Shown one piece after another: positions 9,709 to 60,593 of a DNA stretch of 64,000 bases. Each line of letters starts with the position of its first letter. The first letter of the stretch is position 1. A program made the position numbers and the translations under genes. This DNA comes from Laetmonice hystrix. Its lineage: Eukaryota. Location of the stretch: positions 8,680,001-8,744,000 of the forward strand of contig OZ249446.1 in assembly GCA_965235115.1 (NCBI GenBank). Reading direction: 5' to 3'. The notes under the pieces are model-generated. The model did not search any database. It had not been told where the DNA came from and worked only from the letters and a program-made list of their open reading frames with translations.

Positions 9709-10801
9709 AGGTCGTTAAGAGTGTAATCTCACAGGGCAATGTTCCTGAAGACCTGGCTGGTCTGCTGTTCCTTCTCTCACAGGGCAATGTTCCTGAAGAC
9801 CTGGCTGGTCTGCTGTGTGTAATCTCACAGGGCAATGTTCCTGAAGACCTGGCTGGTCTGCTGTGTGTAATCTCACAGGGCAATGTTCCTGAAGACCTGG
9901 CTGGTCTGCAGGTCGTTAAGAGTGTAATCTCACAGGGCAATGTTCCTGAAGACCTGGCTGGTCTGCTGTTCCTTCTCTTACAGGGCAATGTTCCTGAAGA
10001 CCTGGCTGGTCTGCTGTGTGTAATCTCACAGGGCAATGTTCCTGAAGACCTGGCTGGTCTGCTGTGTGTAATCTCACAGGGCAATGTTCCTGAAGACCTG
10101 GCTGGTCTGCTGTTCCTTCTCTCACAGGGCAATGTTCCTGAAGACCTGGCTGGTCTGCTGTGTGTAATCTCACAGGGCAATGTTCCTGAAGACCTGGCTG
10201 GTCTGCTGTTCCTTCTCTCACAGGGCAATGTTCCTGAAGACCTGGCTGGTCTGCTGTTCCTTCTCTCACAGGGCAATGTTCCTGAAGACCTGGCTGGTCT
10301 GCTGTTCCTTCTTTCACAGGGCAATGTTCCTGAAGACCTGGCTGGTCTGCTGTGTGTAATCTCACAGGGCAATGTTCCTGAAGACCTGGCTGGTCTGCTG
10401 TGTGTAATCTCACAGGGCAATGTTCCCGAAGACCTGGCTGGTCTGCTGTTCCTTCTCTCACAGGGCAATGTTCCTGAAGACCTGGCTGGTCTGCTGTGTG
10501 TAATCTCACAGGGCAATGTTCCTGAAGACCTGGCTGGTCTGCTGTGTGTAATCTCACAGGGCAATGTTCCTGAAGACCTGGCTGGTCTGCAGGTCGTTAA
10601 GAGTGTAATCTCACAGGGCAATGTTCCTGAAGACCTGGCTGGTCTGCTGTTCCTTCTCTCACAGGGCAATGTTCCTGAAGACCTGGCTGGTCTGCTGTTC
10701 CTTCTCTCACAGGGCAATGTTCCTGAAGACCTGGCTGGTCTGCTGTGTGTAATCTCACAGGGCAATGTTCCTGAAGACCTGGCTGGTCTGCTGTTCCTTC
10801 T
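9709..10801. repeat. Variant-repeat minisatellite: 22 units of 48 or 57 bp with a constant core and three interchangeable tails
   Basis: Core CTCACAGGGCAATGTTCCTGAAGACCTGGCTGGTCTGC plus tail TGTGTGTAAT (A), TGTTCCTTCT (B) or AGGTCGTTAAGAGTGTAAT (C). Order BAACBAABABBBAABAACBBAB. Confidence 0.97.
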
Positions 10802-12423: not shown

Positions 12424-12677
12424 CTTTGTTTCTGACTATATCCCCAAATAACCGGCCGACTTAACTTTGTTTGCGACTATATCCCCAAATAACCGGCCGA
12501 CTTAACTTTGTTTGCGACTATATCCCCAAATAACCGGCCGACTTACCTTTGTTTGCGACTATATCCCCAAATAACCGGCCGACTTAACTTTGTTTCTGAC
12601 TATATTCCCAAATAACCGGCCGACTTAACTTTGTTTCTTACTATATCCCCAAATAACCGATCGACTTACCTTTGTTT
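12424..12677. repeat. Minisatellite, 41-bp unit, about 6 copies
   Basis: CTTTGTTTGCGACTATATCCCCAAATAACCGGCCGACTTAA repeated at a 41-nt period. Confidence 0.95.
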
Positions 12678-14779: not shown

Positions 14780-14949
14780 CTCACTGTTCCAGGTGGGGCT
14801 GGTAGTATTTGGTTGGATAGACGTCCGAGTCTCCTGGCCGTGATGGGTGAGGCGAGGGAAACTCGATCGTTTCCCGGGCTGGATCGACATCTTCACGTAC
14901 GGGTCAGGGTTGAAGAACATGCCCTTCTTCAAGTATTTGGAAGTCATGT
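14780..14949 (-). CDS. HECW: HECW-like E3 ligase exon, N-terminal half of C2 domain ([57 protein letters not shown])
   Basis: Acceptor TTGTGTTGTTTCAG| and donor GAG|GTGAGT. 170 nt, phase 1 to 0, joining the 4068 exon in frame. The [19 protein letters not shown]...HHGQE.R motif is diagnostic of HECW1/2. Confidence 0.96.
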
Positions 14950-15587
14950 CTGAAACAACACAAGCAGATACATACAATCAGACACCCGCTGAGCAGTACC
15001 CGTGGAGGAAACGTCTTGGATTAGCTGGAGGCTCTCGTGAAAACGAGGCAATCACTGCTTCCTCTGAAACTTGATCGCTCTAACTCTACACACACCGGCG
15101 ACCACTGGGACATGAAATCACTGGTTGCAGACGTTACGGATAGAAGCAATTTCCACGAGGAACCGACACCGACTTCTGGTAATGAGTAGTGTATCGTACA
15201 ATCTGACTCGTGCAAGAAGACACCGGGACATCGTTACACCTACACCCATCAGCTAGTACTCCACAGATCTGTTACCACAGATCTCTGCCTTCGCCTTATG
15301 ATGATAATAATGGCGGGATTTCAAGGGAAAGGATTCCATGTAAAACTGAGGCACCAACTGTTACCCAATCCCTTGCGATCTGAAATAAAGAAATAACCAC
15401 CTGAACTGTCGTCAAACTTCCACTTCAACTTCTCAATTTTAAAGTCACAGCAGCAGATATCATCAAATTCTTCATGTATGAGCAATTAAATGCAGACAGC
15501 AATCTGAGAGGACTTCTCTGATTATAGACCGAAGCGCAGGGTAAAACATTTGGCTCTCGCCAAGCTCCGATTGCAAACCAATTATAC

Positions 15588-17308
15588 AGACGTCACCTAT
15601 TGCCATCACTCTCCGTCCCAGTAAATTCACAGTCCATCTTCCCCTAAATCTATAAACGTACGACTCTTACTTCAGTTGGACCCAGAGATTTGGTCAGACG
15701 GATTCTGGACGATATCTCTCCGTACTGACGTCACCTATTGCCATCACTCTCTATCCCAGTACATTCACAGTCCATCGTCTCCTAAATCTATAAACGTACG
15801 ACTCTTACTTCAGTTGGACCCAGAGATTTGGTCAGACGGATTCTGGACGATATCTCTCCGTACTGACGTCACCTATTGCCATCACTCTCTATCCCAGTAC
15901 ATTCACAGTCTATCGTCCCCTAAATCTACAAACTCTTACTTCAGTTGGACCCAGAGATTTGGTCAGACAGATTCTGGACGATATCTCTCCGTACTGACGT
16001 CACCTATTGCCATCACTCTCTATCCCAGTACATTCACAGTCCATCTTCCCATAAATCTATAAACGTACGACTCTTACTTCAGTTGGACCCAGAGATTTGG
16101 TCAGACTCTGTCCGTACTGACGTCACCTATTGCCATCACTCTCTATCCCAGTAAATTCACAGTCCATCGTCTCCTAAATCTATAAACGTACGACTCTTAC
16201 TTCAGTTGGACCCAGAGATTTGGTCAGACGGATTCTGGACGATATCTCTCCGTACTGACGTCACCTATTGCCATCACTCTCTATCCCAGTACATTCAGAG
16301 TCCATCGTCTCCTAAATCTATAAACGTACGACTCTGACTTCAGTTGGACCCAGAGATTTGGTCAGACTCTGTCCGTACTGACGTCACCTATTGCCATCAC
16401 TCTCTATCCCAGTAAATTCACAGTCCATCGTCTCCTAAATCTATAAACGTACGACTCTTACTTCAGTTGGACCCAGAGATTTGGTCAGACGGATTCTGGA
16501 CGATATCTCTCCGTACTGACGTCACCTATTGCCATCACTCTCTATCCCAGTAAATTCACAGTCTATCGTCTCCTAAATCTATAAACGTACGACTCTGACT
16601 TCAGTTGGACCCAGAGATTTGGTCAGACTCTGTCCGTACTGACGTCACCTATTGCCATCACTCTCTATCCCAGTACATTCACAGTCCATCGTCTCCTAAA
16701 TCTATAAACGTACGACTCTTACTTCAGTTGGACCCAGAGATTTGGTCAGACGGATTCTGGACGTTATCTCTATGTACTGACGTCACCTCACGTAACTCTC
16801 TATCCCAGTAAATTCACAGTCTATCGTCTCCTAATAAATCTATAAACGTACGACTCTTACTTCAGTTGGACCCAGAGATTTGGTCAGACGGATTCTGGAC
16901 GATGTCTGTCCGTACTGACGTCACCTATTGCCATCACTCTCTATCCCAGTACATTCACAGTCTATCGTCTCCTAAATCTATAAACGTCCGACTCTTACTT
17001 CAGTTGGACCCAGAGATTTGGTCAGACTGTGTCCGTACTGACGTCACCTATTGCCATCACTCTCTATCCCAGTACATTCACAGTCCATCGTCTCCTAAAT
17101 CTACAAACTCTTACTTCAGTTGGACCCAGAGATTTGGTCAGACGGATTCTGGACGATGTCTGTCCGTACTGACGTCACCTATTGCCATCACTCTCTATCC
17201 CAGTACATTCACAGTCCATCGTCCCCTAAATCTACAAACTCTTACTTCAGTTGGACCCAGAGAATAGAGATTAGGTCAGACGGATTCTGGACGATGTCTT
17301 TCCGTACT
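15588..17308. repeat. Tandem repeat, about 120-140-bp unit (138-bp consensus), about 13 copies with indel variants; each full unit carries TGACGTCA
   Basis: CGTACTGACGTCACCTATTGCCATCACTCTCTATCCCAGT...CAGTTGGACCCAGAGATTTGGTCAGAC repeated. It explains ORFs 15676-17347. Confidence 0.97.
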
Positions 17309-28785: not shown

Positions 28786-29947
28786 CTCAAAGACCAGTCA
28801 TTCTGTTTGCCAAATCCATTAATATTCTGACTGGTCTATGGGACGTTTATTACTCTCAAACAACGTCCAATCAGTCAGGTGACCATTTGAACAACTAGAG
28901 CATGTGTTGATTAACAAGCATGTTGACACAGCCGCTAACTGAGGTGACTGACCTCACCTGGCGGGGACTACTCCCTGACCGCCCCCACCCTCCCATTCCC
29001 ACTCACAGTAAATCAATCTCATGAAATCATGCGATCATTAATCACACAAACCAAGCACGAGGACTGCCTTACTGCCTGACCCACCTGTCCAGACCGCATA
29101 CCTTGGGTACTAAATTACTCTACGACATGATGACCACAGAGTTGTGGTCGTGTGACCGATTACCCAGTACACACCAGGTCACCAGCTACTACCAACAACA
29201 TGGAGTCATGACCCCCATGTTGATCGTACACATCACACAGGACGAGCGGAAATCTAATTTAAGGCACAAAGTCAGGGAGCTGCTATCATTGATCAGATCC
29301 AGGTACTCAGCCACACCTAGGCTTGGAAAGTAACCTGATTCTAATCAAACCATGAGGGGTATCAGCATCCTTATGATCAGTATTTATAAAAAATCATATT
29401 GGTAGGCCTACTGAAAACAAATTGGATCACCGATCAGTATGAAGATGATTTGTATCAGTACCAAAAGATCAGTGTCAAAAGACAACCTCTTTAAGTACCA
29501 AATACCACCTGTTGAAGTATCAAAAGTCAACTTGCATCAGTATCAAAATTCCACCTGGATCAGTGTCAAAAATATAACCTGCACAAGTATCAAAGGAAGA
29601 CAGAGCATGAGTGTGAAATAGTGAAATCCTGGACGGTCGCGGGTGTATTTGTATAGTTATCACACAGTGAGACGGCCTGCGGTAGGGCGATCTCTGTCTG
29701 CCTACCCTAGATCCTGGCGCTCTCTTTCTCTTTCTCTCCATCTCTCTACCTCTCTCAACCTCATGTACCTGATGCTGAGACCTAAAAACAGTCCTCAGCA
29801 ATGACTGATACACGCTGGTTTACACACAGACCCTTCTATACGCAGACATGCCCCCAGTCTCCCCATTCTTTATCTGTCATTGAAAATTAAAGAGCCCAAG
29901 AAGAATTCATGTGTTGTTTGACGCCCTCTTTAATCATGTCGACTCAC

Positions 29948-31742
29948 CTGAATCCTCGGACAAGTTGATGGGATCTAGAGACTCGGCCGAGTCGGACTCA
30001 CTCGACTGACTCGACTCACTTGAGGACCGACTTTTCACCGACTCGTCAATCATATCTGAGCTGCTCTCCAGGGTAAGACCCTGACCACTGACGGCATGTA
30101 GCACGTAATCCTCTGACCCGTTCATGAACGTAATCTCCGTCTCCAGTCCTCCTGCAGGCTCCAAATGTATATTTTCTACCGAATTCCCCCCACATGGCGG
30201 CGGGGCAATTACCTCAAGTTGACCACGTCGTAATTCACCGGATTGGTTTCCGCTATTGCAGGTCATAGACTGTGGGGGAGGACTAGACTTATACGTGAGA
30301 GGTTCCCTGAAGCCATTCTGGCAAGGGGTTAGGTTGTTATCAGAGGCATGTTGGCAGGGTTGGGAATATTGAACGATATCACTGCTACGAGCTGCCATCG
30401 AGATCTGGCTGTCCCCATGCTGATAAGCAGATGACTGACCACGGAGACCATTACACCTTCCTGGCTCTCTCGTCCTCTGGGACAATGCCTTCTCAGTCAG
30501 GGACACAATTGCTTTTTGTGCTGCTTTTAATTCGGCAAGGAAGCGGCGGCCCATTTCCCTGCTGTACTTTGGGGGTTGGTCTGGCAGGGCTGATGCTGTT
30601 GGCGGTCTTGCCTCTCGGCAGGGACAAGACATGGGACATGGGTCTGGTTGTTGTAGTTGGGACTGTTCACCGTCAGAGGACCATGAGCTAGGGTATGTCC
30701 AGTTATTTGGGACACTGATGCGGTGAGTTGCGGGGTAGGACCTCATTAATCGGATCCTATTTAGGGGGGTGGGTGCCAGCCAGGCGTTACCTGGTACATC
30801 AATCAAACCCGTCAATTCGCCCTGGTCCGGACCCGTGTGGCTGTGTCGGACACCGCGGGCAACAGTCGGTGTGGAGCTAATTGGACCCCCAGCCTGAAGC
30901 TGGGACCACATTGCCTGGTTCATCATCAGGGTGGTGCCAGCGGTGCTGCTGGTTGTGGTGGTGGTGGCTATGGTGGTGCTCATTTCAGTGTTACCATGGT
31001 GAGGAACACCTGCCTGGCTGTGCATCATTCTCATTACCGTGTCCCTAGATACGACAGACTGAGGTCTGCTGTCAATGGGATGTCTCCTGTATCTGACAGC
31101 AGCCCTGCCCACCCGCCCCCCTCCACACTCAGCCTCCTCACCTAACACCTGAGCTCGGGGCACTCCTGCCATCAACTGGTGCCGATTGTACACTGTCTGC
31201 CGGAGAAACTCACACGCTGGACACTCGAGCGGACCCTGCTCGCCCGGGTTGTAACAAGTTGACCTTTGTTTTACCTGCTCCGGTCGCTCTGCCTGCTCGT
31301 ACTGGACCGCCGGGCCTGGGGCAGGGTCCGTCCCACATGTCTGTCTGTAAGCATTAAACTGACCCGTCACAGCATGAGGGTGGGGGTGACCGTCGCTGTG
31401 ACCACACCGACCGTACGTTCGGTCACACTGACACGGTGACGGTTGGTCGTCATCGTTACCGTAACAACGCTGACATTCGTAATAGTCATTACGATATTCT
31501 TCCTCCCTGGGACAGCGCCTGTGAGAGTCGTGCTGCGGTTGGTGATGATTTTGTTGTTGTTGCTGTTGTTGTTGCTGCTGCTGCTGCTGCAGTTGACAAG
31601 AGCAGGCTCCAGCTGCACACCTGGCCTGGTCCGTAGCTCCAGACTCCGGCAGTTGCTGCTCCTTGTACCGAATGGTCATCACGCAGTCAGGCAGGCTGTA
31701 GACGCCGATGTCGTAGTTCGGGATGAACGCCTTCCCCTCCAT
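29948..31742 (-). CDS. Putative alternative first coding exon of the HECW gene: 598-aa low-complexity N-terminus (polyQ, Cys/His-rich patch, PPKY motif, Ser/Glu/Asp-rich end)
   Basis: 1795-nt stop-free stretch, by far the longest non-repeat ORF here. ATG at 31742 follows an in-frame TGA at 31748-31746. It ends at TCAG|GTGAGT in phase 1, which is the entry phase of the 14949 exon. Same strand as the host gene. Splicing to 14949 is inferred, not observed. Confidence 0.72.
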
Positions 31743-32100
31743 CTTTCACCCGTTGCGTCCTCCTCAGGACCACATCAGCCGACGGTGGATGATGTTGTAA
31801 GATCTGTCATTGTGGGAAACCACCTCATCCTACGTGCGTACGTCTGTACGGCCGGGTAGTTGACGGAGGCTGGCTGGCTGTGCGGCTGACTGCGGGCTGC
31901 ACGTCGTACCGCGTGAGAATGAGCCCCCTACCGGCTGGGCTGGCCTGGGCTGGGCTGGCTGCCTCGCTCTCCCTCCCTCTCTCACACACACACGGCCAAT
32001 GTAACATGCACCACCGCTCCGCTAGCCCGCCACCACCGCCACCGCTGCCGCCGCCACCGCCGCAGCGAGCCAAACTGCCACCGCCAGCCTCGACGAACTA
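31743..32100 (-). promoter_or_regulatory. GC/CpG-rich leader or internal promoter region of the putative alternative first exon
   Basis: (GGC/GGT)n tract, (GT)n/(GA)n runs, CCAGC repeats and high CpG density directly upstream of ATG 31742. No good phase-1 acceptor found at the start of the ORF. Confidence 0.5.
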
Positions 32101-33619
32101 CTTTGTGGAAGGTTACATGACGTGAAAAGCACTGTCACCAACTGCTTGCCACTGACATTACAAGTTCTCAGGCTATCGTGGCGGCAACTATCGAGGCAGA
32201 TTGCCGGATTCAGTCTGAGCTGCTATGGTTACCCTTAGAAAAAACCTCCCAGGTGAATCCTGGCGCTAAGTTGTTACCTTGGCAACCAACATCCTGGTGC
32301 ATTGTAGTGTAACAAAGCCGGGAGCGTGGGCCCCTGATGTTGTCTTAGATAATAGACTCTACATGACACTATATGGATCCACCAGCCTTGGAAACGGACA
32401 CGGCCGGCAACAACTGCTGGCACAGTTTTTGTGTCCCTTTTATAATAAAGGGATTACAATGAATTAGATGCGGTCCCCTGGGGATGACAACCCTCCGAGT
32501 GACCAACCCGTGAGCTGTGAGGGTTAATCCTTCGGTGCTGCAGTTATGAGATAATCCATCACAATTGCCGCCCTAATCTACAGGTCAACACACAGTCCCA
32601 ACCAATCATGCACGTTAACAGTAACCATCTTCACACACCAGCCGTCACCAAAGTGGTAGCGACCTAAGCTCACCGCCAGATCTTCCGTTTCCATGGCAAC
32701 ACATAAAGCCTTGAGACGTCTTTCAATTGCGTGTTGGCCGTTCAAGCCCCCATGTTGTGCCGTTTGTCGAGTACCCAGAAGGCAGTACGTCAACCATTGG
32801 AGACTGGTCGTCCTGGGGATCCAAGACAAGTGTTGCACAGTTGTCCTCTCTCATTAGGATGTAGGCGTCATGCCGTCTCTACAGCGACTTACTCCTGCCA
32901 CCAACGCCTCCCAACCACTACCGGACTTGTCGTTGTGACTCACGCCTTTACTCTGTTAACAGTGGCAGGCCTGGGTGGCTTGTGGCGGGTTGGGGGGTGG
33001 GGGGTGGGGGTTGGTGCAGACGACACGTTTACCCTCCGGTTGGTGTGCTCTGTGTACAACATTTCCTCTGTGTGGTAAACCCCTCCCCACTGCTATTTCC
33101 TGGTTCTCTCATGTTCAACACAAACCACTTTAGCCTCTGACACCGTCTCAGACGTTTTTCTTTGTTATTCTTTTTTTTTACTGTTTTAGAGTTCGTACGT
33201 GTACAGTACGTGTTGCCAGTGGAAGGTTAGTGAAGGTTTACACTCATTTACCACATTTGGCCCTGGGTGGGTGATCATTGTGGGTTCGACCTGAGATGGG
33301 GCTGTGATAAGGTACCTAAGGACTCACGCCGCAGATGACAATACCTCAAGGCACTCCCCTCAGAACAGGCTAGTGCCTGCGGGTAAAACCTCGCCCAGAC
33401 ACAAACTTTTGAAGTACCTTTTATATAGGTCTATATCATAGTGCTTCACTCTATGTCCTTGCTGTGTTTAATATTCATTGATTATTGGAAGTTATCATAA
33501 CATCATGATGAACGACCTTGTTACATTTCATGACAACCACACCACAAAATATCAATACTCGAGCGGTGTGTCTTCTCTTGGGGACGAGATGCAAAACTTC
33601 ATTGGTAGTAGTTTTTTTT

Positions 33620-42300: not shown

Positions 42301-42445
42301 GAACAAGCGCTCGCAGGTTTCATAATCGAGTCTTTATAGAAAACAGAACCACAGTATTTTAATTAAACAATCTACATGTAGATACATTGTAATTACAACT
42401 CACACCGTAGGAGTAGTTGAAGCTAGCCCGACTGATGTTCTACAA

Positions 42446-43340
42446 CCGTGTGGTGGTGGTGGTGGTGGTGGGGGCATCTCCCGAGGAGGAGAGTTTGGTA
42501 GCCGTGTGGTGGTGGTGGTGTTGGTGGTGGTGGTGGTGGCATCTCCCGAGGAGGAGAGTTTGGTAACCGTGTGGTGGTGGTGGTGGTGGTGGGGGGGGGG
42601 GCATCTCCCGAGGAGGAGAGTTTGGTAACCGTGTGGTGGTGGTGGTGGTGGGGGGGGGCCATCTCCCGAGGAGGAGAGTTTGGTAACCGTGCGGTGGTGG
42701 TGGGGGGGGGGCCATCTCCCGAGGAGGAGAGTTTGGTAACCGTGTGGTGGTGGTGGTGGTGGGGGGCATCTCCCGAGGAGGAGAGTTTGGGAACCGTGTG
42801 GTGGTGGTGGTGGGGGGGGGGCCATCTCCCGAGGAGGAGAGTTTGGTAACCGTGTGGTGGTGGTGGTGGGGGGGGGGGCATCTCCCGAGGAGGAGAGTTT
42901 GGTAACCGTGTGGTGGTGGTGGTGGTGGTGGTGGTGGTGGTGGGGGGGGGGCATCTCCCGAGGAGGAGAGTTTGGTAACCGTGTGGTGGTGGTGGGGGGG
43001 GGGGGGCATCTCCCGAGGAGGAGAGTTTGGTAACCGTGTGGTGGTGGTGGTGGTGGGGGGGGGGGGCATCTCCCGAGGAGGAGAGTTTGGTAACCGTGTG
43101 GTGGTGGTGGTGGTGGTGGGGGGGGCATCTCCCGAGGAGGAGAGTTTGGTAACCGTGTGGTGGTGGTGGGGGGGGGGGGCATCTCCCGAGGAGGAGAGTT
43201 TGGTAACCGTGTGGTGGTGGTGGGGGGGGGGCATCTCCCGAGGAGGAGAGTTTGGTAACCGTGTGGTGGTGGTGGGGGGGGGGGGGGCCATCTCCCGAGG
43301 AGGAGAGTTTGGTAGCCGTGTGGTGGTGGGGGGGGGGGGG
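42446..43340. repeat. Compound array: 15 copies of a constant 32-bp core separated by variable (TGG)n-(G)n tracts
   Basis: Core CATCTCCCGAGGAGGAGAGTTTGGTAACCGTG. Spacers are only GGT triplets and poly-G of varying length. It explains the Pro/His/Thr-rich ORFs 42400-43447. Confidence 0.96.
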
Positions 43341-45091
43341 GAGGGGGGCAGAGGGAGTGTGTATCGATCACCCGGAAGCGGATGTCTGTAAGATGGCTGA
43401 TCTCCGAACAGCTGTTTGTTTGATGTACCGGCACTAAACATTATCATGCGGCCTGTGATGTATGCTGCTCATTAGTGCAGACAATGTCCACGATTGCCAC
43501 GTTATCGACCATTCATCAAGGACCGTTGACAAGTCACCACCGGGCCTTTCGCTCAGATCCCGCCGGGCCGGGCCGGGCCGGGGGCTGGGGTAATATAGGC
43601 ACAAACAAAGCGGTAGAAACAACACCCACCATATTGACCACATATTGAAGAAAAAAATCCATTTACTTAACCTTTTTGAACATTTCTGATTTACCTAGAA
43701 AGACATTTCACACATACTGACAAACTCTACGATACCAACTGTCACCAGAGCAAAAACTAGGCCATAAAGGGGTGCGTCGCCTAACATCCGAAACAAACTA
43801 TCCTAACAATTCAAATAAACACCCTGACAATTCAAAGGTTCAACCTCTTTGTAAGGACCGACTGTGTGTATGAGATAGAAACTATTTTTCTAAATGAACC
43901 TTCGCACACTTAAACCGACTGACTGATGACACATTATTACAGGTCAGATGTTCAACCAAAACATGAGGTGAGTCTTTTTAAATTGTAGTTCAACTTTACG
44001 GCTTTCAAATTAAGTGAAACATAACGGAGGTTTCAAAATAACTCAACGCTGAGAGCGAATCACAGTTATGATACTTAGCTACAAAATATAACCTTACCGT
44101 TTAGTATTAGTATAACAATATTCAGTATGATAAATGATAGGATTCATGGCAAGCCATTCTTTAAGCACAATAAATGCTAATTGCAATTCTATTTCCATAT
44201 AATGATCTATTAAAGCCACCTGGCTGTTAGGGTTGGGTAACACCTTTGACTAACGGGCGACATGACCATCCATACAGGTTGGCCTGGGAACGTCACACCT
44301 CCGGGCATCCCGCCAGATGGCGCCTTACATGATCTCTGGGTGACCCCTACCCGCCTTTAGTCTACTAGTTCAAACAGTTCATTCTTGGTGTTTAGTGCGA
44401 GGATCAGTAAATTGCTTTCAATATCACCAAGTAATAGCTTTGCTGGGGTTACTCACATTCATAGAGATAAATACCAGCATATCAGGGTTGAAGAAATAAA
44501 CATAAATGCTGAATCTGGGAAGACGATACAAGCCAGAATTCAGCGTAGCTACCTGTGACACAGACACGATGAAAAACGATAGTGTACTGTATTGCTGCAT
44601 CTCAGATTCCCCGCTCGTTATCACCCGGTACCATGATCAGACACACCCAAACACTGACATTGTTCTCCTAACATCCAGATTCGGACTTTCTTTTCTATCT
44701 AAAATCTGTAATACTCATTTTACCATACCGGAAGCACCTATTTAGTACGAGAATTAAAATGAACCATGGATAAACGCTGGTTGTGAACATGTTGCGGCCT
44801 TGGCAGTTTCCGGCCTCCCGTGCGAGTCCCCAATAAAACCAGCTGTTTCTAGCCATGCATGATAACCTTAGTTAAAAACTTACAACCATATTGTCAATCA
44901 CAAATCTTCCTTTGGCAGTGCTGCAAAAACATTTATTCTTTCACAATTGGAAAAGTCTAAAAGCCTATCTGGCAGTCTTCTCCACAACACCCTAACGTTG
45001 GCATCTTTATAGGAGACCCAAATAGTGGTTCCTACTTGACATGATCACATCATGTGAAAGCCTAGAGTAGGCGAGGTAAGACTGAACCTAC

Positions 45092-45167
45092 CTGAGATGG
45101 TAAAACGGAGTAGGGCGCCTGGTTCACTGGGTTGGGCCTTGCCACGTGCTCGTCCATGTGACCCACC
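45092..45167 (-). CDS. HECW: HECW-like exon: linker plus first beta-strand of C2 (GGSHGRARGKAQPSEPGALLRFTIS)
   Basis: Strong pyrimidine tract TTTTCTTGTGTTTTCTCTCACTACAG| and donor TCAG|GTAGGT. 76 nt, phase 0 to 1, the phases required between the 50998 and 14949 exons. LLRFTIS|D parallels HECW LVSFTLS|D. Confidence 0.85.
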
Positions 45168-47653
45168 CTGTAGTGAGAGAAAACACAAGAAAACCGAAGG
45201 TTATTTAATGTGGTAACCACTCCTGATGTCCCATCACGACAATGGGTCCTTAATACCACCTTCGAAATATGTACATTCACATTTCTGGACTCGAATTGTC
45301 CCAAGACACTGTCTTGTAGCATAGCTCAATTTTTACATTCACAGGAAATGTGAAAATGCCTTAAATCAACACAAGGCTTTTCTTGAGACTGAGGTTGACG
45401 TTTTAATTCAGGTCCAAGGGAATCCATTAGGATACAATGTACTCGGATTTTATACCATATAATCCCAGTTAATTGGTGGTAAAAAAAAGACAGGGACAAG
45501 AGGCGGTAGAATTCATTCATCTTGGTGTCACCATTACTCACCATCCTGCAAACCATGGCTGGAGGTCAGCGACAACCAATCTACTCCCAGCTGGACTGGC
45601 TACCTATCTCTGCAGTCAAACCATGGCAACCGGCATGCTTGAGAGAAGGCCGTGTTCCTAGAATGAGCGCCTCACTCTACCGCCTCATTCTACCGCCTCA
45701 TACCTTCTCCAGCCAGGCCGTAGACAGCGGTTAGCGATACAAGTCGAGGTTGAACACCACTCACAGGAAACAGTCTGTCTGAGCTGCCGCCACATGGCAA
45801 TGCCGGTTATATATCATTAACCGTAAAAAACAGCCGACATATCCAACTACAGCCACCAGGTGAGCCTGCAACCATTGGGTCAGACATCTGTATATACTTT
45901 TTATATATATTCTGACCACAGTAGCCAAATGGCACCAGACCATACTGTACCACTGTAACCCATTCCACAGTCTATCTCTTCAACCAGTGGATACTTATAA
46001 TGATGCTTTTCTGACCTTACGATTTAAAAGGTCATTAAGTTCTGTTTGAATTGCGCACTGTTCCTCCTGTTCCATGTCTCTCATCTCAGTCCAGCTCAGT
46101 CCTCGGCACAGAGTCCTTAACACAACCATCCTTGTACCGCCAGACTTGGCCGTCGTTTTACAAAGATATCAGGCACACACAGATCGGATGAACTACAAGT
46201 CAGCGTACATCGCTCAGCTTTCTGAGGGCCGCTATCCCTGCTACGAGTCAGTCTTCAAACGATTGTCGGGTCCCTCGAGGTCTCAAATAAACTGTTAGCT
46301 CTTCCACAATCAGTTCATGTCAAGACGACATTGAGAGGGTTTTCCTCACTGTGTTCACATGCGGCAGTTCCCGGCCGGCCGTCCACTGCCACAGACGACC
46401 GAGTTTAGATCACACCAAGTCCTGGCCCGGACAATCTCAGTAACTTGGAACCGAGTCTCAACCATCCACTAGTTGAGTTTTCTTGACCGTCTCGTGGATC
46501 AGACTGATGTATAGGACGTTTGAGGTGGAAACATGTTGCCATGGTATCAGCATGTAAAGCCAGACATACTTCCTGAGGTTGGGTCGTTGACGGTGGGTGG
46601 GTGGTGTCGGTAACAGCTGGCATAGTGAACTCGCACTGTTGCTGAACTCTGTACCAATTTCTCCCCGTGTCTCACTGGGTCAATAGGTAATCATGTTGGA
46701 TTTGAGGCGAGTTAAACAGTCCACATTTTATACTCATCCTTTAGTCCAGGTCTTTGTCTCTTTGCACTTTATTTCTCGTCAACATATTTTCTCTCACCCT
46801 CCCCCCCCGCCCCCCCCCACCCCCCAAAAAAAACAGTACCAGACACGAAATTGTATGTTTTCAAAATTGATTACTTTCTGTAACACAACTACGATGAAAG
46901 TAATTTCAATCGAAATTGATCAAAGACTGGCAAACATTCATACCACCCTAAATAATTAAACACTCTTAGTGAATTTACCGGCAGTAAAATACAATTTCAT
47001 TGCTGCTATCGCCTTCTATTTTTCATTTGAAACCCTGGGGTTACGTTTTGGTAAAAACCAACCTTGATATGATTGGAGTATTATGGTATCGAGTAATTAG
47101 AGTTAATTGAAATCTCCAGCCTCCTCCACAGTGCTCTAAACAAATTACTATCCTGATGAGGTTATATGTACGGGGTAATCAAAAGGTCGTACATCCCTTC
47201 TGTTGATCTCAAATAGCAGTGACACACACACACTGGCCAATCCTGAATGGATACCGATATCTACTTAAACTCAGACGTTGTGATTCTCTGTCATATTTTG
47301 GCAAGGCCCCACTCGACCAGACGTTTCGTGTTGGCACCCGGTTCGAGGTAAGGTGGCGTACAATTGGCGCCCCCAATGACATGACTAGGAATGTTTTAAT
47401 AACTCGTTTTTAATCCCACCGTGTGTGACAGCCGCTGAGAGCGTGTAGACACTGACAGGTCGGTAATAAAGGGTGGTGGTTTTTGTGGTCACCTAGCCCA
47501 CCCGACTCTAGCAACCAGTCTGTATGTCGGGAAGGGGGGGGGACAGGTCAGGACAGGGACAGGTTTCTCGACCACACCACATTCCAACCATTCCTCTATC
47601 ACAGATCGCCACCGACTCATTTCTCCATAATTTTTCTTTTACTTTTCATCTAA

Positions 47654-50997: not shown

Positions 50998-51095
50998 CTT
51001 ATCAACCGTAGGATTTCTGACGATAATTGCCGAGCTCGCAGCAATAAGTGCACCTGTCGACCCCTGGTAGTAACGGAAGCACACTCTGGTGGCAG
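50998..51095 (-). CDS. HECW: HECW N-terminal domain exon (AATRVCFRYYQGSTGALIAASSAIIVRNPTVDK)
   Basis: Acceptor TTTATTTCGTTGTTTTCAG| and donor AAG|GTCAGT. 98 nt, phase 1 to 0. Matches the HECW motif KICFKYYHG.SGALRATTP.ITVKNP. Confidence 0.92.
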
Positions 51096-51417
51096 CTGAA
51101 AACAACGAAATAAAACGCTAGTATTGTTAGACATATCCTTAGGGTTACTCCTGCAAGCAAACAAACGGCCTTCAATCAAACAACATTCACCCCAATCATA
51201 ATGACTACATCTTCTTCGATGGCTATTCTGAAAAGATTCAGCACATCTCGCAGCACTGGACTGGTTTATCTTAGAGGTTAAAATATCAACTAGGGGAGGC
51301 CCCGACTCTTCGCTACGTTTGTCATCTTATTCCGATGTTCTTATCACATAAGATTATGCTTCACTGCGTCTTGCTGCATGATCTGCAAGAGTCGGCGAAC
51401 AGGGCTCGCCTGTGAGT

Positions 51418-51464: not shown

Positions 51465-51686
51465 CGGAATTCGTTGCTGTCCCGACAAATTTTAAGCACG
51501 CTCGCGCAAAATGGCCAATGGTAAAAAAATATCCAAAGAATGTCGTTTGCTTTCACGGAAAACCCATTTTCCTTACATATTTTTTTACAAAAAATGTTAC
51601 CATACCTGAAACATTCTATAAATCAGCAAAGCAAACCCTGGTAATGCTTGAGAAAGGTGATACCTGAGGCTGAAAACTGAACTTAC

Positions 51687-51797
51687 CATCTGCAAAATTG
51701 TGCTCGACGTTATCAATGCACCACGGTATCTCGCCAGTCTGAGCGACATTGGTGCCGCGATTCTTCTGATCAATGAAGTTGGTGGGTGAACTGCCAT
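51687..51797 (-). CDS. HECW: HECW N-terminal domain exon (DGSSPTNFIDQKNRGTNVAQTGEIPWCIDNVEHNFAD)
   Basis: Acceptor TTACTTTTTGCAG| and donor ATG|GTAAGT. 111 nt, phase 1 to 1. Matches HECW SP.NF.D.KNRG..G.Q.GQI.W.I. Confidence 0.92.
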
Positions 51798-54564
51798 CTG
51801 CAAAAAGTAATTTTATACATTATCTCTAAGGAGGTGACGTCCACATCAGAAAGCAACATGGTTATATAACAATACAACGTTGGATACAGGGGCCTATTTC
51901 AGCCTTATTTTGAGATATCCACCGCCACCCCAACCAGCAATGTTCGCAATAATATTGAACAATTTATTATGTGAGCAAAGACGGACATTCTGGTCAGGAC
52001 TTTCGCAAATGTCCACATGATGACAGTAGGTAGGCCTATAGGTCTAACCCTGGTAGATTTTACCCTCTGTGGGGTCCTGCTCGTAATGACATCAAACTTT
52101 GCCTCGGTGAGGACATCAATTTCTTATCCCCATAAAGATACTGGGAGTTTATTGGATTGTTGATGAACTTTACCGTTTAAACTTCCTCACGTGCTACAAC
52201 TCGATCCTCCCCCATCATGGTTATCAATAATCATCAGACGATGCTAAGATAATCTAAGATAAGTTACGGTAAGTAGCCAAAGTATCAATCAAGCGTATAT
52301 AAGCCAAGTCTGGCTTCAGTCTGAGACCCAGATACATAATGAGGTTATATCCAAGTTGGTTATTTGGACCAGAAATAAAAACCTACATGTAGGCCTACTG
52401 ACTTTCAATGACAAATCTGTCAATATTACGGTAAGCCTCCCTAGTTCAAGTACCCGTCATATAAACAGTACACTGTATTGTGTACACTCATAATAACGTG
52501 TAGGCCTAGGCCTACTAGTAGAGGTTACCAGACATAGTGAATTTACTAATTGATTTTTGTAAAGGCCATCCCTGATGACCGTAATCAAGCGACATGTACA
52601 TGCATTAGCCAGATGATATGCCGGCCATGATGATCGAGTCCCGTGTAACAATCTATTTGTTTCCGTCCCCAATGATACTCTGTCCTAATAACGAGTCACA
52701 CAGCATGTCTATGATGTTTTCTGCTTTAATGAAAACACGACTGACAACTGAGGCCACTCGGTACGACTAGCGAGTGAGAGGACCCACGACAGACATACTA
52801 ATACCACCATTACAGTTAGATCGCTTCTTTCGTCCTTTTTATAGTTTCCATATTAATCATTCATCACGCGATATATATAGTTGATCTCCCGCTTAGGTCA
52901 TCTAAATGATAACAGATAGTTTTATCAATTTCAAACACTAATCCTTCACAGGACAATATTTAGTTAACCGGCCAGGCTTATCTACATGTCAAAACTGTAT
53001 GGGATTTTTAAACGTGAATTAGTTATTTTCTGATGTGACTAGCGATAACCCCCCCCCCCCCCCCCATGCTATTAAACCCAAGTCACTCTATTGCTAAAAA
53101 ACTAGTAGGAAATCAACACATAATCCAGCAGTTCATAAGAAATATATGATTTTCTATGTGTACCGAGGTTTTGTTTAGTGCTAACTTTGTTCGTTTTGAT
53201 TACCAAACCTGAGAGAACCTTTGTCTTATAGCCTGACTCTTTAATATTCTTTAAAAAAAATTGATATTCTTGATCTTATCAACCTGTGAATGTAATTACC
53301 TGTTTCAACCCAATAGAACAAAATTGCTAAGTCGGCCATGAGGTTGTCTCCTGCGAGCAGCTAAAACCATTACACCATCATAAAAAGGTGGCGCCGCAGC
53401 CCTGGTGCCTTTTTCTCATCTCGCTCTCGAGGTCCGAGTTTTTTGGCCACTGACGTGTTTCTCGCCCCCCCCCCCCGGACAGAGCTATATTAATTTTGTT
53501 ATACTCAGTACTATAACACCTTTGTCTAGGTCGCTCGCACACCTCACCTAGTCATGTTATGTAGGTAAGGAGTCTAAATCTTTGCAAATTTTACCGCAAT
53601 GTATTCGGGACCAAACTGACTTATCCTCTTCTTAAAGACCAAGTATGTTTTCACATTTACCTTTTTATAAATCGGAAAAAAATGCAGACAAGAGCGGAAC
53701 TCCCCTTTGAAAACTGAAATATAGGGCAAGAATCCAACTCTTTATGAAAGAAATTTTCTAATGCCAGTAATTGGAGAGTAAAGCAGTCGTTATGAAAGGA
53801 ACATTAAGAAAGGAAACCATTACAATCCCTCAATCCTGACAGTCTCAGGACTTGCTCTATGATGTAGTGGGAGGTAACGTAATAGGGAAGAAACATGACA
53901 CAAACATATATCTAACTTGATCACTTGTGGCCCTAACCAAACAAACCTAGTCAATAAAACTAAAACGGATTAAAAGATAACAGGAACCGATTGTATCCAT
54001 GGCAACAAAGGACCACTCCTAGCATCAATGGGCTGCGAACTTGACACCTGTCATTTATGGAGTGATATTGATCACTCAGATTACCATGGTAAGCCTGAAT
54101 ATGCCTTCTTTGCAATAATGGGCTAATCCGTTTGGAGAAACCCAATCAGATGGGGCCTTGGAGGCAAGACATGGCCGAGCAACCTGGAGGCCGACGGATG
54201 TGACAGTGTCTCATGAATAATACCCTCAGATATCACCGCCAATCAACCAACCACCATAGGCTGTCCTGATAGGGGGACAATATTCACCGTGACATGAAGA
54301 AATCCTCTCTACTGATCATATTGAAACCAACAAAGTCATTATCACAATGATATGGCATCACAATATCGCAAAATATCGGATGATTTAGAAACGTAATACG
54401 AGGGTACCTAATGATATCACTCAGAATACGATAATAGTTGTGAAAAACCGGCCATTTGGTGGAGTGGCCTAAGGATAGCCTCATGGCTGCCTGTATCAAC
54501 ATGTCCACATTGTACTGGACCTCAAATCTGGGTTGTACTATTTCAAGTATTTGATTTCCAGACT

Positions 54565-57339: not shown

Positions 57340-57705
57340 ATACTGCACCTCCTGTATATTGCACCGATTGCACCATAACTACTCCTGCATACTGCACCGA
57401 TTATACCATAACCACTCCTGCATACTGCACCGATTATACCATAACCACTCCTGCATACTGCACCGATTATACCATAACCACTCCAGCACACTGCACCGAT
57501 TATACCATAACCACTCCTGCATATTGCACCGATTATACCATAACCACTCCTGCACACTGCACCGATTATACCATAACCACTCCTGCACACTGCACCGATT
57601 ATACCATAACCACTCCTGCAAACTGCACCGATCAGTTGGCACCGATTATACCATAACCACTCCAGCATACTGCACCGATTATACCATAACCACTCCTGCA
57701 TATTG
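57340..57705. repeat. Minisatellite, 33-bp unit, about 10-11 copies
   Basis: ACTGCACCGATTATACCATAACCACTCCTGCAT at a 33-nt period. It explains ORFs 57255-57737. Confidence 0.95.
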
Positions 57706-60297
57706 CAGCAGTTGTAACCACTAAGGACTGTATACACTCATACTGCACCAGTTCTAGCTACTCCAACAAATATAGCTCTGACATCAAATAATGTAAAAAT
57801 ATCATGTCAAAAAGTATGTTATACTAATTCACGCATTTACTGACAAAGCTTGTCTGAAAACCTGTCTAACTCTGGTCCTTGGTAAAGTATTTTTCTGAGC
57901 CTAATAGAACCCACTCCCCCACTACACTCAATAACAGGCTGTCAGGCCTGGAGTAGCGGGCCGCAGCGAACAACCCTGCCACAGCTAATGACCAGCCCTG
58001 CTGTATGGGTTAACGACCTATAAGAGACCCATCGTAACATTCCAGTAATAAAATGGAGGCCGGTGGTGGTAGTGGTGCAGGCGGTGGTGGTGCAGTGGTG
58101 CTGTATATTGATGGGGAGCTGACATGACATACTAGAGGCCAACACATGGGTGCTCGGACTGGAGCTCTGTCCCAAGTGTTACAATGGCCGGGTAATCTGC
58201 CGACTATCAATATGTGGACAGCTCCCTTTGTGCTATATGATCTATGTCTGGAGGCGGTTCACAATACCTCACGGTATCTGTAAGCAATATATCCCAACAC
58301 ATACCTGGTGCATGCCAACCACAGGTGTGATACAATATTGACTATGTGTACAACCTGCTCCCAAATTAGGGGTTAAAACCTAATGTGTTTATTCAACAAA
58401 CTCTCTCTCTATCCCTTGAGAAGAGCAAATACACAGGGTCATGGTTTGATTAAGTAGGCATGGCAAGGTTTACTGTTCCTATAGGGCCCGATAATGCAGT
58501 TTTTCCACGGTGCCCGTTATTCCTCGCTCAGAGTTTTCAAAAATTCTAGACACTTTTTGACAGAAACACGGTCTTCCATGTTATCACTTATCAGTGATAT
58601 AACTATATCCTCAGGGGTGGTCGCGGTGATAACGATTCTCGCTGTCTCTATTACCTGCAACCTAGCCTAACCTTTACCTAGATTTATAATGTACTCATCC
58701 ACTTTTTGGATGCCTCAAGGGTCACCAAAGGTCATCAAGGGCACTGGAATAAAGCCTAGCATTTTAAGGCTTTCTTTTCTCAGAATGTGCTAGGATGTGA
58801 CCTAGAATGATTCCTGTGGGATCAGCGAGTTACTGCAAGAACTCTCTGCCTGTAACTGCCTGAGGTATCTTTGTTTATGTCCACAGATCCCAGGCCAAAT
58901 GTTACAAAACACGCACGTCTGTAAATAATCCGGGCTCTCCGTTCATTGATAGATTCCCACAGGAAAACAAATCGGATGCTGATTAGAATATTTCATCACC
59001 CATGAGCTACTCTCTACAGGTTTGCGTCATTTACCATACTGTTCGTGCCATTCAAATGGCAAACACTAATTTCCATATAAAATGATAATCTTAATCCAGC
59101 AATAAATTTTGATTAAAATCACATGAATGTCGTGGCAATAGCTGCATGGTGAACACAGTTTTATTGAGAAATACATTTCTATGCTAACTCTGATTGACAC
59201 AATCTGGCTATTGCACTATGGCTTCAATATTCAACAGAAACACTCATTATCTTACGAGACACTTAGTATTCCTGAAAACTCCCAGGCTCATAGATAATTC
59301 AACTTTGAGACATCTCATCATGCTCATGTAATCTGTCAATGTCAAGTGCAAAACACACATTAAATATCTGATTTTGATATTTTTCCTATCATGTTCCCTT
59401 CCTGCAGAAATTACTTCTGAAATTGTTATTATTATAAGGATGGTTATGATTGCAATATCCTACTACATGTATATTTTTAAGACTATTTAACACTCATCTT
59501 CCCTCTCCCTCTTCCATATTTTCTGTTCAGATCCTGAACCCGGAATAACGGAAAATAAAAACTTAATAAAACGTTACCATAAAAAATATATCTTTCATAT
59601 TAATTCAATATATTCAACAATTTCAAACTATTGATCAGTGAACCAACCCTGCGACAATTTGACAATTCTCTAATTATAACGCTCATCAACCAAACATGAG
59701 ACCTGAGGTCAAATGACCATGTTTTAAACATGACCTCAATTAGTGTCCCAAAGCATGATGCATTCAACCGTGTTTGGATAACATGTAATTAAGAGGGGGT
59801 TGGCTCCGTGTGATCTAGGGACAGATGGTGGGTTCCTATTTCACCCAGTTATGGGGGTGGTGAGCGTTTCTAGGGCAGGCCACCACATGACCTGACCTCG
59901 GGTCAGAACCAACGGGTTTCCAGAACTTGGCAAACAGGAGTTGCATATTAAAGAGAAACAGTTGCAACTTGCAAGCGCATCTGTCTGTTGAGCTACGGAC
60001 ACCTAGTATAAGCTGGAACGATCAATTACTTTTTCAAATTTTCTGATTGAAGGTGAGGATTATTGGGTTAACTAGTAGAGAACCCTTTAATGTCTTTTGA
60101 TGTTGAAAGCCGTTGGGTTGATTATTAAATGAGTCCCCCCCCCCTTGGTGTTTGGGCTGTAACAAAAAGCTGAGCAATAAGGAAGACGCCTTGTTTTCAC
60201 CCAAGTCACACACTCCTCCACAATTCTGTTAGCAAGCCAAGCTGACCCCAGCGTGAAGCCAGCATGACCCCAGCATGCCCCCAGACGTGTGACTTAC

Positions 60298-60593
60298 CCA
60301 GTAGGAAGAGTCCAATCCAATCACTTGCGCTGACTGTCTCCTGGATGTCCCACGACACGACCACGTTGTCGCCTGACCCCAGCATGTAGTCATGCCTGTT
60401 GATGGCGAGGCTCGAACGGTTCTGGAAATTGTGGTGGGCCAGACTTGTGTCGCTGTTAGCACGATCGTGAAGGTTCAGACGTCGCAGACTCACCATACTC
60501 CCGGAGCTCGAGTGGTGGTCATCAAACATTTCTTCAGCTCGAGCCACAAAATCTGAGCTCATACTATGTCGTATTGGACGAGATGCCGCCATA
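60298..60593 (-). CDS. HECW: HECW exon with start of HECW_N domain (MAASRP...RANSDTSL...RSSLAINRHDYMLGSGDNVVVSWDIQETVSASDWIGLFLL)
   Basis: RANSDT and WDI.E.V..SDWIGL are HECW1/2 signatures. Donor CTG G|GTAAGT is phase 1, matching the 51797 exon. The 5' boundary could be CAG at 60596-60594 or TAG at 60614-60612 (both in frame); translation could also begin at ATG 60592. Confidence 0.93.

What the first reader, a model, noticed from the sequence alone, without database searches (positions are those of the whole stretch)
29948..31742. Hidden 598-codon alternative first exon that would give a HECW E3 ligase a completely different N-terminus
Seen: a 1795-nt non-repetitive open frame in the middle of the 30-kb intron 45091-14950, on the gene strand. 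It begins at an ATG with in-frame stops just upstream and ends at a consensus CAG|GTGAGT donor in phase 1. The flanking exons demand exactly phase 1 (45092 ends TCA G|, 14949 begins |AC ATG), so the junction would read ...[30 protein letters not shown]/CpG-rich leader precedes it and no credible phase-1 acceptor lies at its start. Established: alternative promoters that change the N-terminus are known in NEDD4-family ligases (e.g. NEDD4L C2-plus and C2-minus isoforms). I do not recall a 600-aa swap of the HECW_N domain in HECW1/2. Inference: a second transcription unit makes a lineage-specific ligase isoform with a long disordered N-terminus (polyQ, Cys/His patch, CPACEF, acidic Ser-rich end).
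Basis: partly seen in the sequence, partly recalled or inferred. Interest (0 to 1): 0.8.

Follow-up and report, generated by a model that had tools for sequence, protein, structure and literature searches.

The report
Orphan coding exon inside HECW intron
A real, evolutionarily maintained 598-codon protein-coding exon sits inside a 30-kb intron of a worm's HECW ubiquitin-ligase gene and is built to splice in frame onto the ligase's C2 domain, which would swap the ligase's normal N-terminal domain for a long disordered one, but no RNA data could be brought to bear to show that this splice is actually made.

Summary
Window 29948-31742 (minus strand) is a 598-codon ATG-started open frame. A stop lies two codons upstream, and the frame ends at a perfect CAG|GTGAGT donor in phase 1. 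That is the phase of the HECW exon at 45092 and of the C2 exon at 14949.

It is coding sequence, not chance:
- It is single-copy in the genome.
- Its codon usage matches the other HECW exons.
- Polymorphism is skewed to synonymous changes and it has no indels.
- One other species has a 576-aa homologue (50% identity) with about 26 in-frame gap runs and near-invariant blocks. Similarity stops at the donor.
- That homologue lies on the same 207-kb contig as the relative's HECW exon.
- More distant relatives lack it in the orthologous intron, and no other homologue exists among 1.84 billion representative proteins. It is a lineage-restricted orphan.

The product is predicted disordered. It has a conserved PPxY motif followed by a helix.

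What is not shown is the splice to 14949. No RNA run held the exon.

Best reading (about 0.57): an alternative first exon giving a HECW isoform without the HECW_N domain. Main rival (about 0.3): a separate nested orphan gene.

The parts
29948..31742 (-). 598-codon first coding exon (ATG to phase-1 donor). It encodes a disordered Ser/Gln/Pro-rich region.
   Evidence: ORF, ends; single copy; homologue P0001, 50% identity, in-frame gaps only; 6 synonymous: 4 nonsynonymous SNPs, no indels; codon-usage score.
31740..31742 (-). Start codon in a strong context (GAAAGATGG), with TGA two codons upstream.
   Evidence: The relative's protein starts at the same residue, and residues 1-27 are 24/27 identical.
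29942..29950 (-). Consensus 5' splice site CAG|GTGAGT, phase 1.
   Evidence: Similarity to P0001 ends here. P0001 reads ...A-G-E-L, which is compatible with GCAG|GTGAG; the relative's DNA was not seen.
30480..30581 (-). Most conserved block (residues 388-421, 33/34 identical): DQPPKY (a PPxY motif, 30564-30575) followed by a predicted helix.
   Evidence: conservation; helix 395-422, the only part with pLDDT above 50.
31743..32150 (-). GC-rich leader and possible promoter region (GC 0.63, CpG o/e 0.84). It contains short uORFs.
   Evidence: No TSS data.
32438..32444 (-). TATAAAA, the only TATA-like element in the 1.5 kb upstream of the ATG.
   Evidence: Function untested.
29929..29934 (-). ATTAAA poly(A)-signal-like hexamer overlapping the read-through stop, 14 nt after the donor. 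It is relevant to the nested-gene rival.
14787..14949 (-). First C2-domain exon of HECW, with a strong phase-1 acceptor (ttgtgttgtttcag|AC). This is the proposed splice target.
   Evidence: The acceptor position is conserved in L002, L003 and L004.
45092..45170 (-). Canonical exon 4 (linker ...ALLRFTIS) with a phase-1 donor. It normally joins 14949.
   Evidence: The orthologous exon, with the same phase, is at L002:825-905.
60290..60463 (-). HECW_N domain, part 1 (canonical first coding exon; ATG near 60592).
   Evidence: PF16562 positions 1-56, E 4.5e-11.
51685..51816 (-). HECW_N domain, part 2.
   Evidence: PF16562 positions 48-90, weak, E 0.125.
51004..51102 (-). HECW_N domain, part 3.
   Evidence: PF16562 positions 88-120, E 1.2e-3. 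The orthologue is at L004:44-136.

Best explanation
The stretch is an alternative first coding exon of the animal's single HECW-type HECT ubiquitin-ligase gene. The exon arose in one annelid sub-lineage and has no detectable relatives elsewhere.

Proposed mechanism:
- Transcription starts at an internal promoter in the GC-rich region just upstream (about 31.8-32.4 kb).
- Translation starts at ATG 31742.
- The consensus donor at 29948 pairs with the next functional acceptor downstream, the C2 exon at 14949, in frame.
- The product keeps C2, the long linker, both WW domains and the HECT domain.
- It replaces the HECW_N domain (exons at 60.5, 51.8, 51.0 and 45.1 kb) with a 598-residue disordered region.
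- That region carries short conserved motifs. The best conserved is PPxY followed by a helix, which could bind the ligase's own or another NEDD4-family WW domain.

Shown: a coding exon under selection, a first exon, the donor, the phase match, linkage to HECW in a relative, restriction to one lineage, and predicted disorder.

Inferred: the promoter, the splice to 14949, and any role of the PPxY motif.
For: (1) It is real coding sequence.
- It is single-copy.
- The frame-0 codon-usage score is +0.09 per codon. The other five frames score -0.12 to -0.21. 2000 random intron pieces average -0.27 (sd 0.06, maximum -0.10).
- There are 6 synonymous and 4 nonsynonymous SNPs over 406 and 1388 sites, so pN/pS is about 0.2 (binomial P = 0.012). 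The ORF has 0 indels against 6 in 3.8 kb of flanks.
- The homologue P0001 has E 2e-97 and 50% identity over 1-597. Its blocks are 24/27, 24/30, 29/39, 33/34 and 15/17 identical, with about 26 gap runs that all keep the frame.

(2) It is a first exon.
- The ATG is conserved.
- A stop lies two codons upstream.
- No acceptor was found.

(3) It is spliced.
- It has a perfect MAGGTRAGT donor, a motif found 6 times in 108 kb.
- The donor sits exactly where similarity to the relative ends.
- Read-through gives 4 codons here and 25 unrelated codons in the relative.

(4) The target fits.
- The C2 exon has the same phase.
- Canonical pre-mRNAs already skip every cryptic acceptor in this intron, so 14949 is the first acceptor known to be used downstream. 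This step is inference.

(5) Linkage is kept. The relative's HECW linker exon (P0093, 63% identity) lies on the same 207,021-bp contig of the same sample as P0001.

(6) There is precedent. NEDD4-family ligases use isoform-specific N-termini, for example Drosophila Nedd4-long (PMC3215714, PMC4791135).
Against: - No RNA evidence exists. No RNA-labelled run holds the exon.
- Run X4 has 59 Mb of contigs and is possibly RNA from the same sample. It holds 21% of the words of the constitutive HECW linker exon but did not reach 5% for this exon.
- Several uATGs lie in the 90 nt before the ATG.
- An ATTAAA lies 14 nt after the donor and could end an unspliced mRNA.
- In the relative, the strand and the position relative to the C2 exon are unknown because no DNA was obtainable.
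- A phase match alone has a 1-in-3 chance.
- No annotated HECW protein in the searched libraries carries this N-terminus.
Confidence: 0.57

Rival explanations
1. It is a separate, lineage-specific orphan gene nested in the HECW intron on the same strand. Either the mRNA is unspliced, ends at the ATTAAA right after the stop and gives a 602-aa protein, or the donor joins private downstream exons inside the 15 kb before the C2 exon. Its PPxY motif could still make the product a WW-domain partner, acting as an adaptor or substrate of NEDD4-type ligases.
For: - The ORF is complete on its own: ATG, then a stop 4 codons past the donor.
- ATTAAA overlaps that stop.
- The only homologue was called as a free-standing 576-aa ORF.
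- No RNA or protein record links it to HECW.
- The possible RNA run X4 has some HECW exon sequence but not this exon.
- Orphan genes nested in long introns are common (general knowledge).
Against: - A perfect donor within 12 nt of the stop is unexpected for an unspliced gene (about 8e-4 by the local rate).
- A strong U1 site just upstream would tend to suppress the ATTAAA (established U1 telescripting; inference here).
- The C-terminal tails after the donor are unrelated in length and sequence between the two species.
- The phase matches the C2 exon.
- A private terminal exon would also truncate canonical HECW transcripts.
- Linkage to HECW is kept in the relative.
Confidence: 0.3
2. It is an internal cassette exon of HECW, inserted between the HECW_N domain and the C2 domain rather than replacing HECW_N.
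For: The donor of exon 45092 and the acceptor of 14949 are both phase 1, as the cassette's donor is.
Against: - The frame is closed by TGA two codons before the ATG.
- No phase-1 YAG with a pyrimidine tract exists in or upstream of the ORF.
- Conservation with the relative begins exactly at Met1.
Confidence: 0.03
3. It is a non-functional open frame: a chance ORF, a decaying pseudogene or a transposon remnant.
For: - No Pfam, PDB or Atlas match.
- The predicted structure is almost entirely disordered.
- The composition is low-complexity (polyQ, Ser/Thr runs).
Against: - It is single-copy.
- It stays open over 598 and 576 codons in two species at 50% identity, with only in-frame gaps.
- Polymorphism is skewed to synonymous changes.
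- It has a codon-usage signal in one frame only.
Confidence: 0.03

Closest known systems
Drosophila Nedd4-long (dNedd4Lo) versus Nedd4-short
   Same: One NEDD4-family HECT ligase gene gives isoforms with different N-terminal sequences ahead of the C2 domain. The isoform-specific N-terminus is Pro-rich and non-globular and changes biological function (PMC3215714, PMC4791135).
   Different: - The dNedd4Lo-specific N-terminus is short (bp 1-189, PMC3215714) and no folded domain is lost.
- Here 598 residues would replace a whole conserved domain (HECW_N).
- The gene belongs to the HECW subfamily.
- Expression is unproven.
NEDD4L (NEDD4-2) alternative-promoter isoforms with and without the C2 domain
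   Same: Internal promoters and first exons in a NEDD4-family gene change which N-terminal module the ligase carries. This is recalled from general knowledge and was not checked in a paper here.
   Different: Those isoforms add or drop the C2 domain using short exons. Here C2 is kept, HECW_N would be dropped, and a long orphan sequence added.
PPxY-motif adaptors of NEDD4-family ligases (NDFIP1/2, ARRDC family, Commissureless)
   Same: It has a conserved PPxY motif, the motif that WW domains of these ligases bind (PMC3215714 introduction). This gene has two WW domains.
   Different: - There is no sequence similarity to any of them.
- It has no transmembrane or arrestin domain.
- Binding is untested.
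- Under the favoured reading the motif would sit in cis on the ligase itself.
Canonical HECW1/HECW2 (NEDL1/NEDL2) architecture: HECW_N - C2 - linker - WW x2 - HECT
   Same: The host gene has exactly this architecture. The HECW_N/C2 exon junction is in the conserved place.
   Different: No library protein with an N-terminus of this kind was found. The orthologous intron in other relatives is 9 kb or less and lacks the exon.

Membership tests
HECW-type NEDD4-family E3 ligase (host gene) | HECW_N domain (PF16562) at the N-terminus | tested here: met
   three exon-wise matches at C12 8740290-8740463, 8731685-8731816 and 8731004-8731102. They are the only ones in the genome.
HECW-type NEDD4-family E3 ligase (host gene) | C2 domain followed by two WW domains and a C-terminal HECT domain on the same strand | tested here: met
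   - The C2 exon is 81-87% identical to relatives' C2 exons, some of which carry PF00168.
- WW1 and WW2 sequences were read.
- HECT exons lie at C12 8638316-8640892.
Alternative first exon of the host gene | The exon begins with a start codon and cannot be entered by splicing from upstream coding exons | tested here: met
   TGA two codons upstream, no phase-1 acceptor, and conservation starting at Met1.
Alternative first exon of the host gene | A functional donor in the phase of the shared downstream exon | tested here: met
   CAG|GTGAGT in phase 1, and the acceptor at 14949 in phase 1. This is a sequence-level test only.
Alternative first exon of the host gene | Transcripts that join the exon to the shared downstream exon | not testable with these tools
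   - No RNA holder was found.
Alternative first exon of the host gene | Its own transcription start or promoter | not testable with these tools
   Only composition (GC 0.63, CpG o/e 0.84) and one TATAAAA at 32444 are available. There is no CAGE or 5' data.
Protein-coding sequence under purifying selection | The frame is kept between species, with synonymous-biased variation | tested here: met
   dN/dS between species was not computable because the relative's DNA could not be fetched.
WW-domain ligand (PY-motif protein) | A conserved PPxY motif | tested here: met
   PPKY at residues 390-393 here and PPRY in P0001, inside a block that is 33/34 identical. The expected chance count of PPxY in this composition is about 0.14 (own arithmetic).
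WW-domain ligand (PY-motif protein) | Binding to a WW domain | tested here: inconclusive
   The complex prediction of WW1 with residues 375-428 gave no verdict. It is not evidence either way.
Transposon or retroelement ORF | Multiple copies, or similarity to transposase, RT or gag families | tested here: not met
   Single copy in 627 Mb, no Pfam family, and only one homologue cluster in 1.84 billion representatives.

The most novel reading that the evidence does not exclude
A recently born orphan coding exon has been captured as a new first exon of an ancient ubiquitin ligase. It replaces the conserved HECW_N domain with a disordered arm whose conserved PPxY-helix module acts in cis on the ligase's own WW domains. 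This would be a built-in, NDFIP-like activator or autoinhibitory switch. It would be a natural example of de novo sequence rewiring the regulation of a HECT E3.
Probability: 0.12. Interest if true: 0.7.

Novelty: new variant of a known kind. Interest (0 to 1): 0.45.

Why it matters
If the splice is real, one ligase gene makes two enzymes with the same catalytic and substrate-binding core but different N-terminal modules. One of those modules is an orphan sequence found in only two known species. That would be a clean case of a young coding exon being grafted onto an old, conserved enzyme. It would also offer a handle on what the poorly understood HECW_N domain does, because nature has made a version without it.

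If instead it is a nested gene, it is an unannotated orphan protein with a conserved WW-ligand motif sitting inside a WW-domain ligase gene, which is also worth annotating.

Either way, a 600-codon conserved coding exon is likely to be missed or mis-joined by automatic annotation.

Tried and rejected
- **RNA evidence.** The look-up of sequencing runs with kind rna on 29900-31900 and on the constitutive linker exon as a control returned no run on record as RNA. It gave polymorphism data but no junctions. X4 appeared only afterwards.
- **Family and structure searches.** The ORF had no hits in Pfam, the ESM Atlas or PDB sequences.
- **AlphaFold2.** With the two-sequence alignment, mean pLDDT was 30, so no fold search was worthwhile.
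- **Complex prediction.** WW1 with residues 375-428 gave no verdict (score 0.07). It is not used as evidence.
- **The relative's DNA.** The sample file for contig ERZ26222911 was too large. The donor, the strand and dN/dS could therefore not be checked.
- **The relative's C2 exon.** I looked for it as an ORF call to pin the distance. It was not found on that contig.
- **Other relatives.** tblastn of the exon against 20 kb upstream of the C2 exon found no homologue. I read this as lineage restriction, not as evidence against the exon.
- **A 692-aa ORF upstream of the C2 exon in L003.** It looked like a possible counterpart, but its sequence reads like a retroelement protein and is unrelated.
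- **Literature.** I found no paper describing HECW alternative promoters or annelid HECW.

Full report
**Observation**

On the minus strand an ATG at 31742 opens a frame that runs 598 codons to base 29948. There the sequence reads GAT TCA G|GTGAGT. A TGA lies two codons before the ATG, and the ATG sits in a strong context (GAAAGATGG).

The exon upstream in the host gene ends ...ATC TCA G|gtaggt at 45092. The next canonical exon begins tttcag|AC ATG ACT at 14949. All three sites are phase 1, so both junctions give a GAC codon followed by [17 protein letters not shown], the start of the C2 domain.

The frame is the only long non-repetitive open frame in the window. The other long ones are minisatellites open in every frame.

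**The host gene**

The window is C12:8680001-8744000 of a 627-Mb, 35-contig assembly. Notes from other agents in this scan call the animal an annelid. I did not test that.

The gene is the genome's only HECW-type ligase. Its parts are:
- HECW_N, in three exons at window 60290-60463, 51685-51816 and 51004-51102;
- a linker exon at 45092-45170;
- the C2 exon at 14787-14949;
- an 870-codon open frame holding the disordered linker exon at C12 8653831-8656440;
- two WW domains and the HECT exons at C12 8638316-8640892.

The 30-kb intron that holds the finding therefore separates HECW_N from C2.

**Is it coding?**

Five independent lines say yes.

1. It is single-copy in the genome, so it is not a transposon ORF.
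2. A codon-usage log-odds score was trained on the other HECW exons against this gene's introns.
   - Frame 0 scores +0.09 per codon.
   - The other five frames score -0.12 to -0.21.
   - 2000 random intron pieces have a mean of -0.27 (sd 0.06, maximum -0.10).
3. Three DNA runs of one sample give polymorphism data.
   - The ORF carries 10 listed SNPs, 6 synonymous and 4 nonsynonymous, over 406 and 1388 sites. pN/pS is about 0.2 (binomial P = 0.012).
   - It has no indels, while the 3.8 kb of flanks carry six.
   - This is modest evidence: one sample, contigs rather than reads, and eight variants of the region not listed.
4. HMMER against 1.84 billion representative proteins finds exactly one relative, P0001. 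It is a 576-aa ORF called on a 207-kb ENA contig (E 2e-97, 50% identity over residues 1-597).
5. The alignment to P0001 has near-invariant blocks separated by diverged stretches.
   - The blocks are residues 1-27 (24/27), 156-185 (24/30), 326-364 (29/39), 388-421 (33/34) and 571-587 (15/17).
   - About 26 gap runs all preserve the frame.
   - Neutral DNA at this divergence would not stay open.

**Exon boundaries**

Conservation starts at Met1 in both species, and nothing upstream is open. No acceptor-like site exists at the 5' end or in the 760 nt upstream. It is therefore a first coding exon, not a cassette.

At the 3' end, similarity stops at the donor. After ...SED-S here and ...SEE-A in the relative, both read G-E, as a GGTGAG donor would encode. 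Then this species has 2 more codons and a stop, and the relative has 23 unrelated, hydrophobic codons.

The full consensus MAGGTRAGT occurs six times in 108 kb of the gene strand, and two of those sit in a minisatellite. One within about 15 nt of the end of this frame has a chance of roughly 8e-4. I conclude the exon is spliced at 29948. The relative's DNA was not obtainable, so its donor is inferred from the protein only.

**Where is it found?**

The relative's HECW linker exon (P0093, 63% identical to ours) lies on a contig of the same length (207,021 bp), in the same sample, as P0001. The orphan exon and HECW therefore remain linked. Their gene lists do not overlap, so they are more than about 20 kb apart, and the strand is unknown.

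More distant relatives lack the exon:
- In L002, exon 4 (825-905, same phase, ...CTAG|GTGAGT) and the C2 exon (10091) are 9.2 kb apart, with no similarity to the exon.
- In L004, the third HECW_N exon (44-136) and the C2 exon (6956) are 6.8 kb apart, again without it.
- A further 10 kb upstream in L002 (L011) and in L003 (L012) is also empty.

The exon is thus confined to the lineage of this species and its closest sampled relative. It has no homologue elsewhere and no paralogue in the genome. The search library keeps one protein per 50% cluster, so other close copies could hide behind P0001.

**The product**

There is no Pfam, PDB or Atlas match.

AlphaFold2 with the two-sequence alignment gives a mean pLDDT of 30. 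Only two helices appear, 175-191 and 395-422, and the latter is the only part above pLDDT 50. The region is rich in Ser, Gln, Pro and Gly.

The best-conserved block reads DQPPKYSREMGRRFLAELKAAQKAIVSLTEKALS. That is a PPxY motif followed by the helix. PPxY is the ligand of NEDD4-family WW domains (PMC3215714, introduction), and this gene has two WW domains.

From the composition, a PPxY is expected by chance about 0.14 times in such a sequence, so its presence in the most conserved block is suggestive, not proof. A complex prediction of WW1 with residues 375-428 gave no verdict, and I draw nothing from it.

Other conserved features are several Cys residues (CPACEF, CPxxCPCR) and an acidic Ser-rich end.

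**What does the donor join?**

This is the open point. I found no RNA. Both searches for runs returned only four runs of a single study and sample. The three I laid were DNA.

A fourth run, X4, has only 59 Mb of contigs and so may be RNA. It holds 21% of the sampled words of the constitutive linker exon but did not reach the 5% listing threshold for the orphan exon. That weakly suggests the exon is not strongly expressed in that sample. With HECW itself so thinly covered, it decides nothing.

Arguments for the C2 exon as the target:
- The phase matches (1 in 3 by chance).
- Canonical HECW pre-mRNAs already ignore every cryptic acceptor in this intron, so 14949 is the first acceptor known to work downstream of 29948.
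- A private terminal exon would also truncate HECW transcripts.
- Linkage to HECW is conserved in the relative.

Arguments for a separate nested gene:
- The ORF is complete by itself, with a stop four codons after the donor.
- An ATTAAA overlaps that stop.
- No database protein links the sequence to HECW.

I put the alternative-first-exon reading at about 0.57, a nested orphan gene (unspliced or with private exons) at about 0.3, and the rest on a cassette exon or a non-functional frame. The two main readings are not exclusive, because intron retention would give the free 602-aa protein.

**Comparison with what is known**

Isoform-specific N-termini are established in the NEDD4 family. Drosophila Nedd4-long has a unique, Pro-rich N-terminus that changes its function in muscle (PMC3215714, PMC4791135). 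NEDD4L uses alternative promoters to include or omit C2 (recalled, not checked here).

This case differs in four ways:
- its size (598 residues);
- the loss of a whole conserved domain (HECW_N);
- the orphan, lineage-restricted origin of the new sequence;
- the WW-ligand motif it carries.

I found no paper on HECW alternative promoters of this kind. I rate it a new variant of a known kind, with moderate interest because expression is unproven.

Noticed in passing
window 12424-12677 (minus strand): A 41-bp minisatellite (6.2 copies) whose unit contains a donor-like CAAAG|GTAAGT. Two of the six perfect MAGGTRAGT matches in the 108-kb gene lie in it. It resembles the splice-junction-seeded 'mirage' minisatellites that other agents noted in this genome, but I did not find the exon it would have been copied from.
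   Followed up: partly
window 42444-43341, 9726-10796, 5004-6008, 15585-17308, 57349-57707: The HECW introns are packed with long minisatellite arrays (periods 33-138 bp, up to 22 copies). Several are open in all three frames and mimic 250-390-aa ORFs.
   Followed up: partly
C12:8638943-8640086 (L005:2943-4086), minus strand: An 83-bp tandem array within the HECT-domain part of the gene. Each unit starts an overlapping 65-codon ATG-initiated frame (MSKYYPLDNCSTACLSPHKPMY...). The relative's contig shows a similar run of small ORFs about 82 bp apart, 3.5-4.5 kb downstream of its HECW linker exon.
   Followed up: no
L003:1310-3388 (+), flanked by L003:225-962 and 3563-4255: A 692-aa ORF lies in a relative's HECW intron, with no Pfam hit. 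Its sequence looks like a retroelement polymerase with a GIY-YIG-like C-terminal part (Penelope-like, by eye). It is bracketed by two similar TG/TA-rich microsatellite blocks.
   Followed up: partly
window 31743-31830 (minus strand): Three short upstream ORFs (17, 11 and 3 codons) lie within 90 nt of the main ATG. If they are in the 5' UTR they would damp translation. Alternatively the start site lies downstream of them.
   Followed up: no
P0001 locus, about 10 kb upstream of the relative's exon: A 401-aa product with a PEG10/retrotransposon gag capsid domain (PF03732) lies on the opposite strand, about 10 kb upstream of the relative's copy of the exon. It shows that the interval is a target of retroelement insertion there.
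   Followed up: no
run X4: A fourth run of the same sample has only 59 Mb of contigs, a size more like a transcriptome. It holds a fifth of the constitutive HECW linker exon. It is the obvious data set for testing the junction.
   Followed up: no
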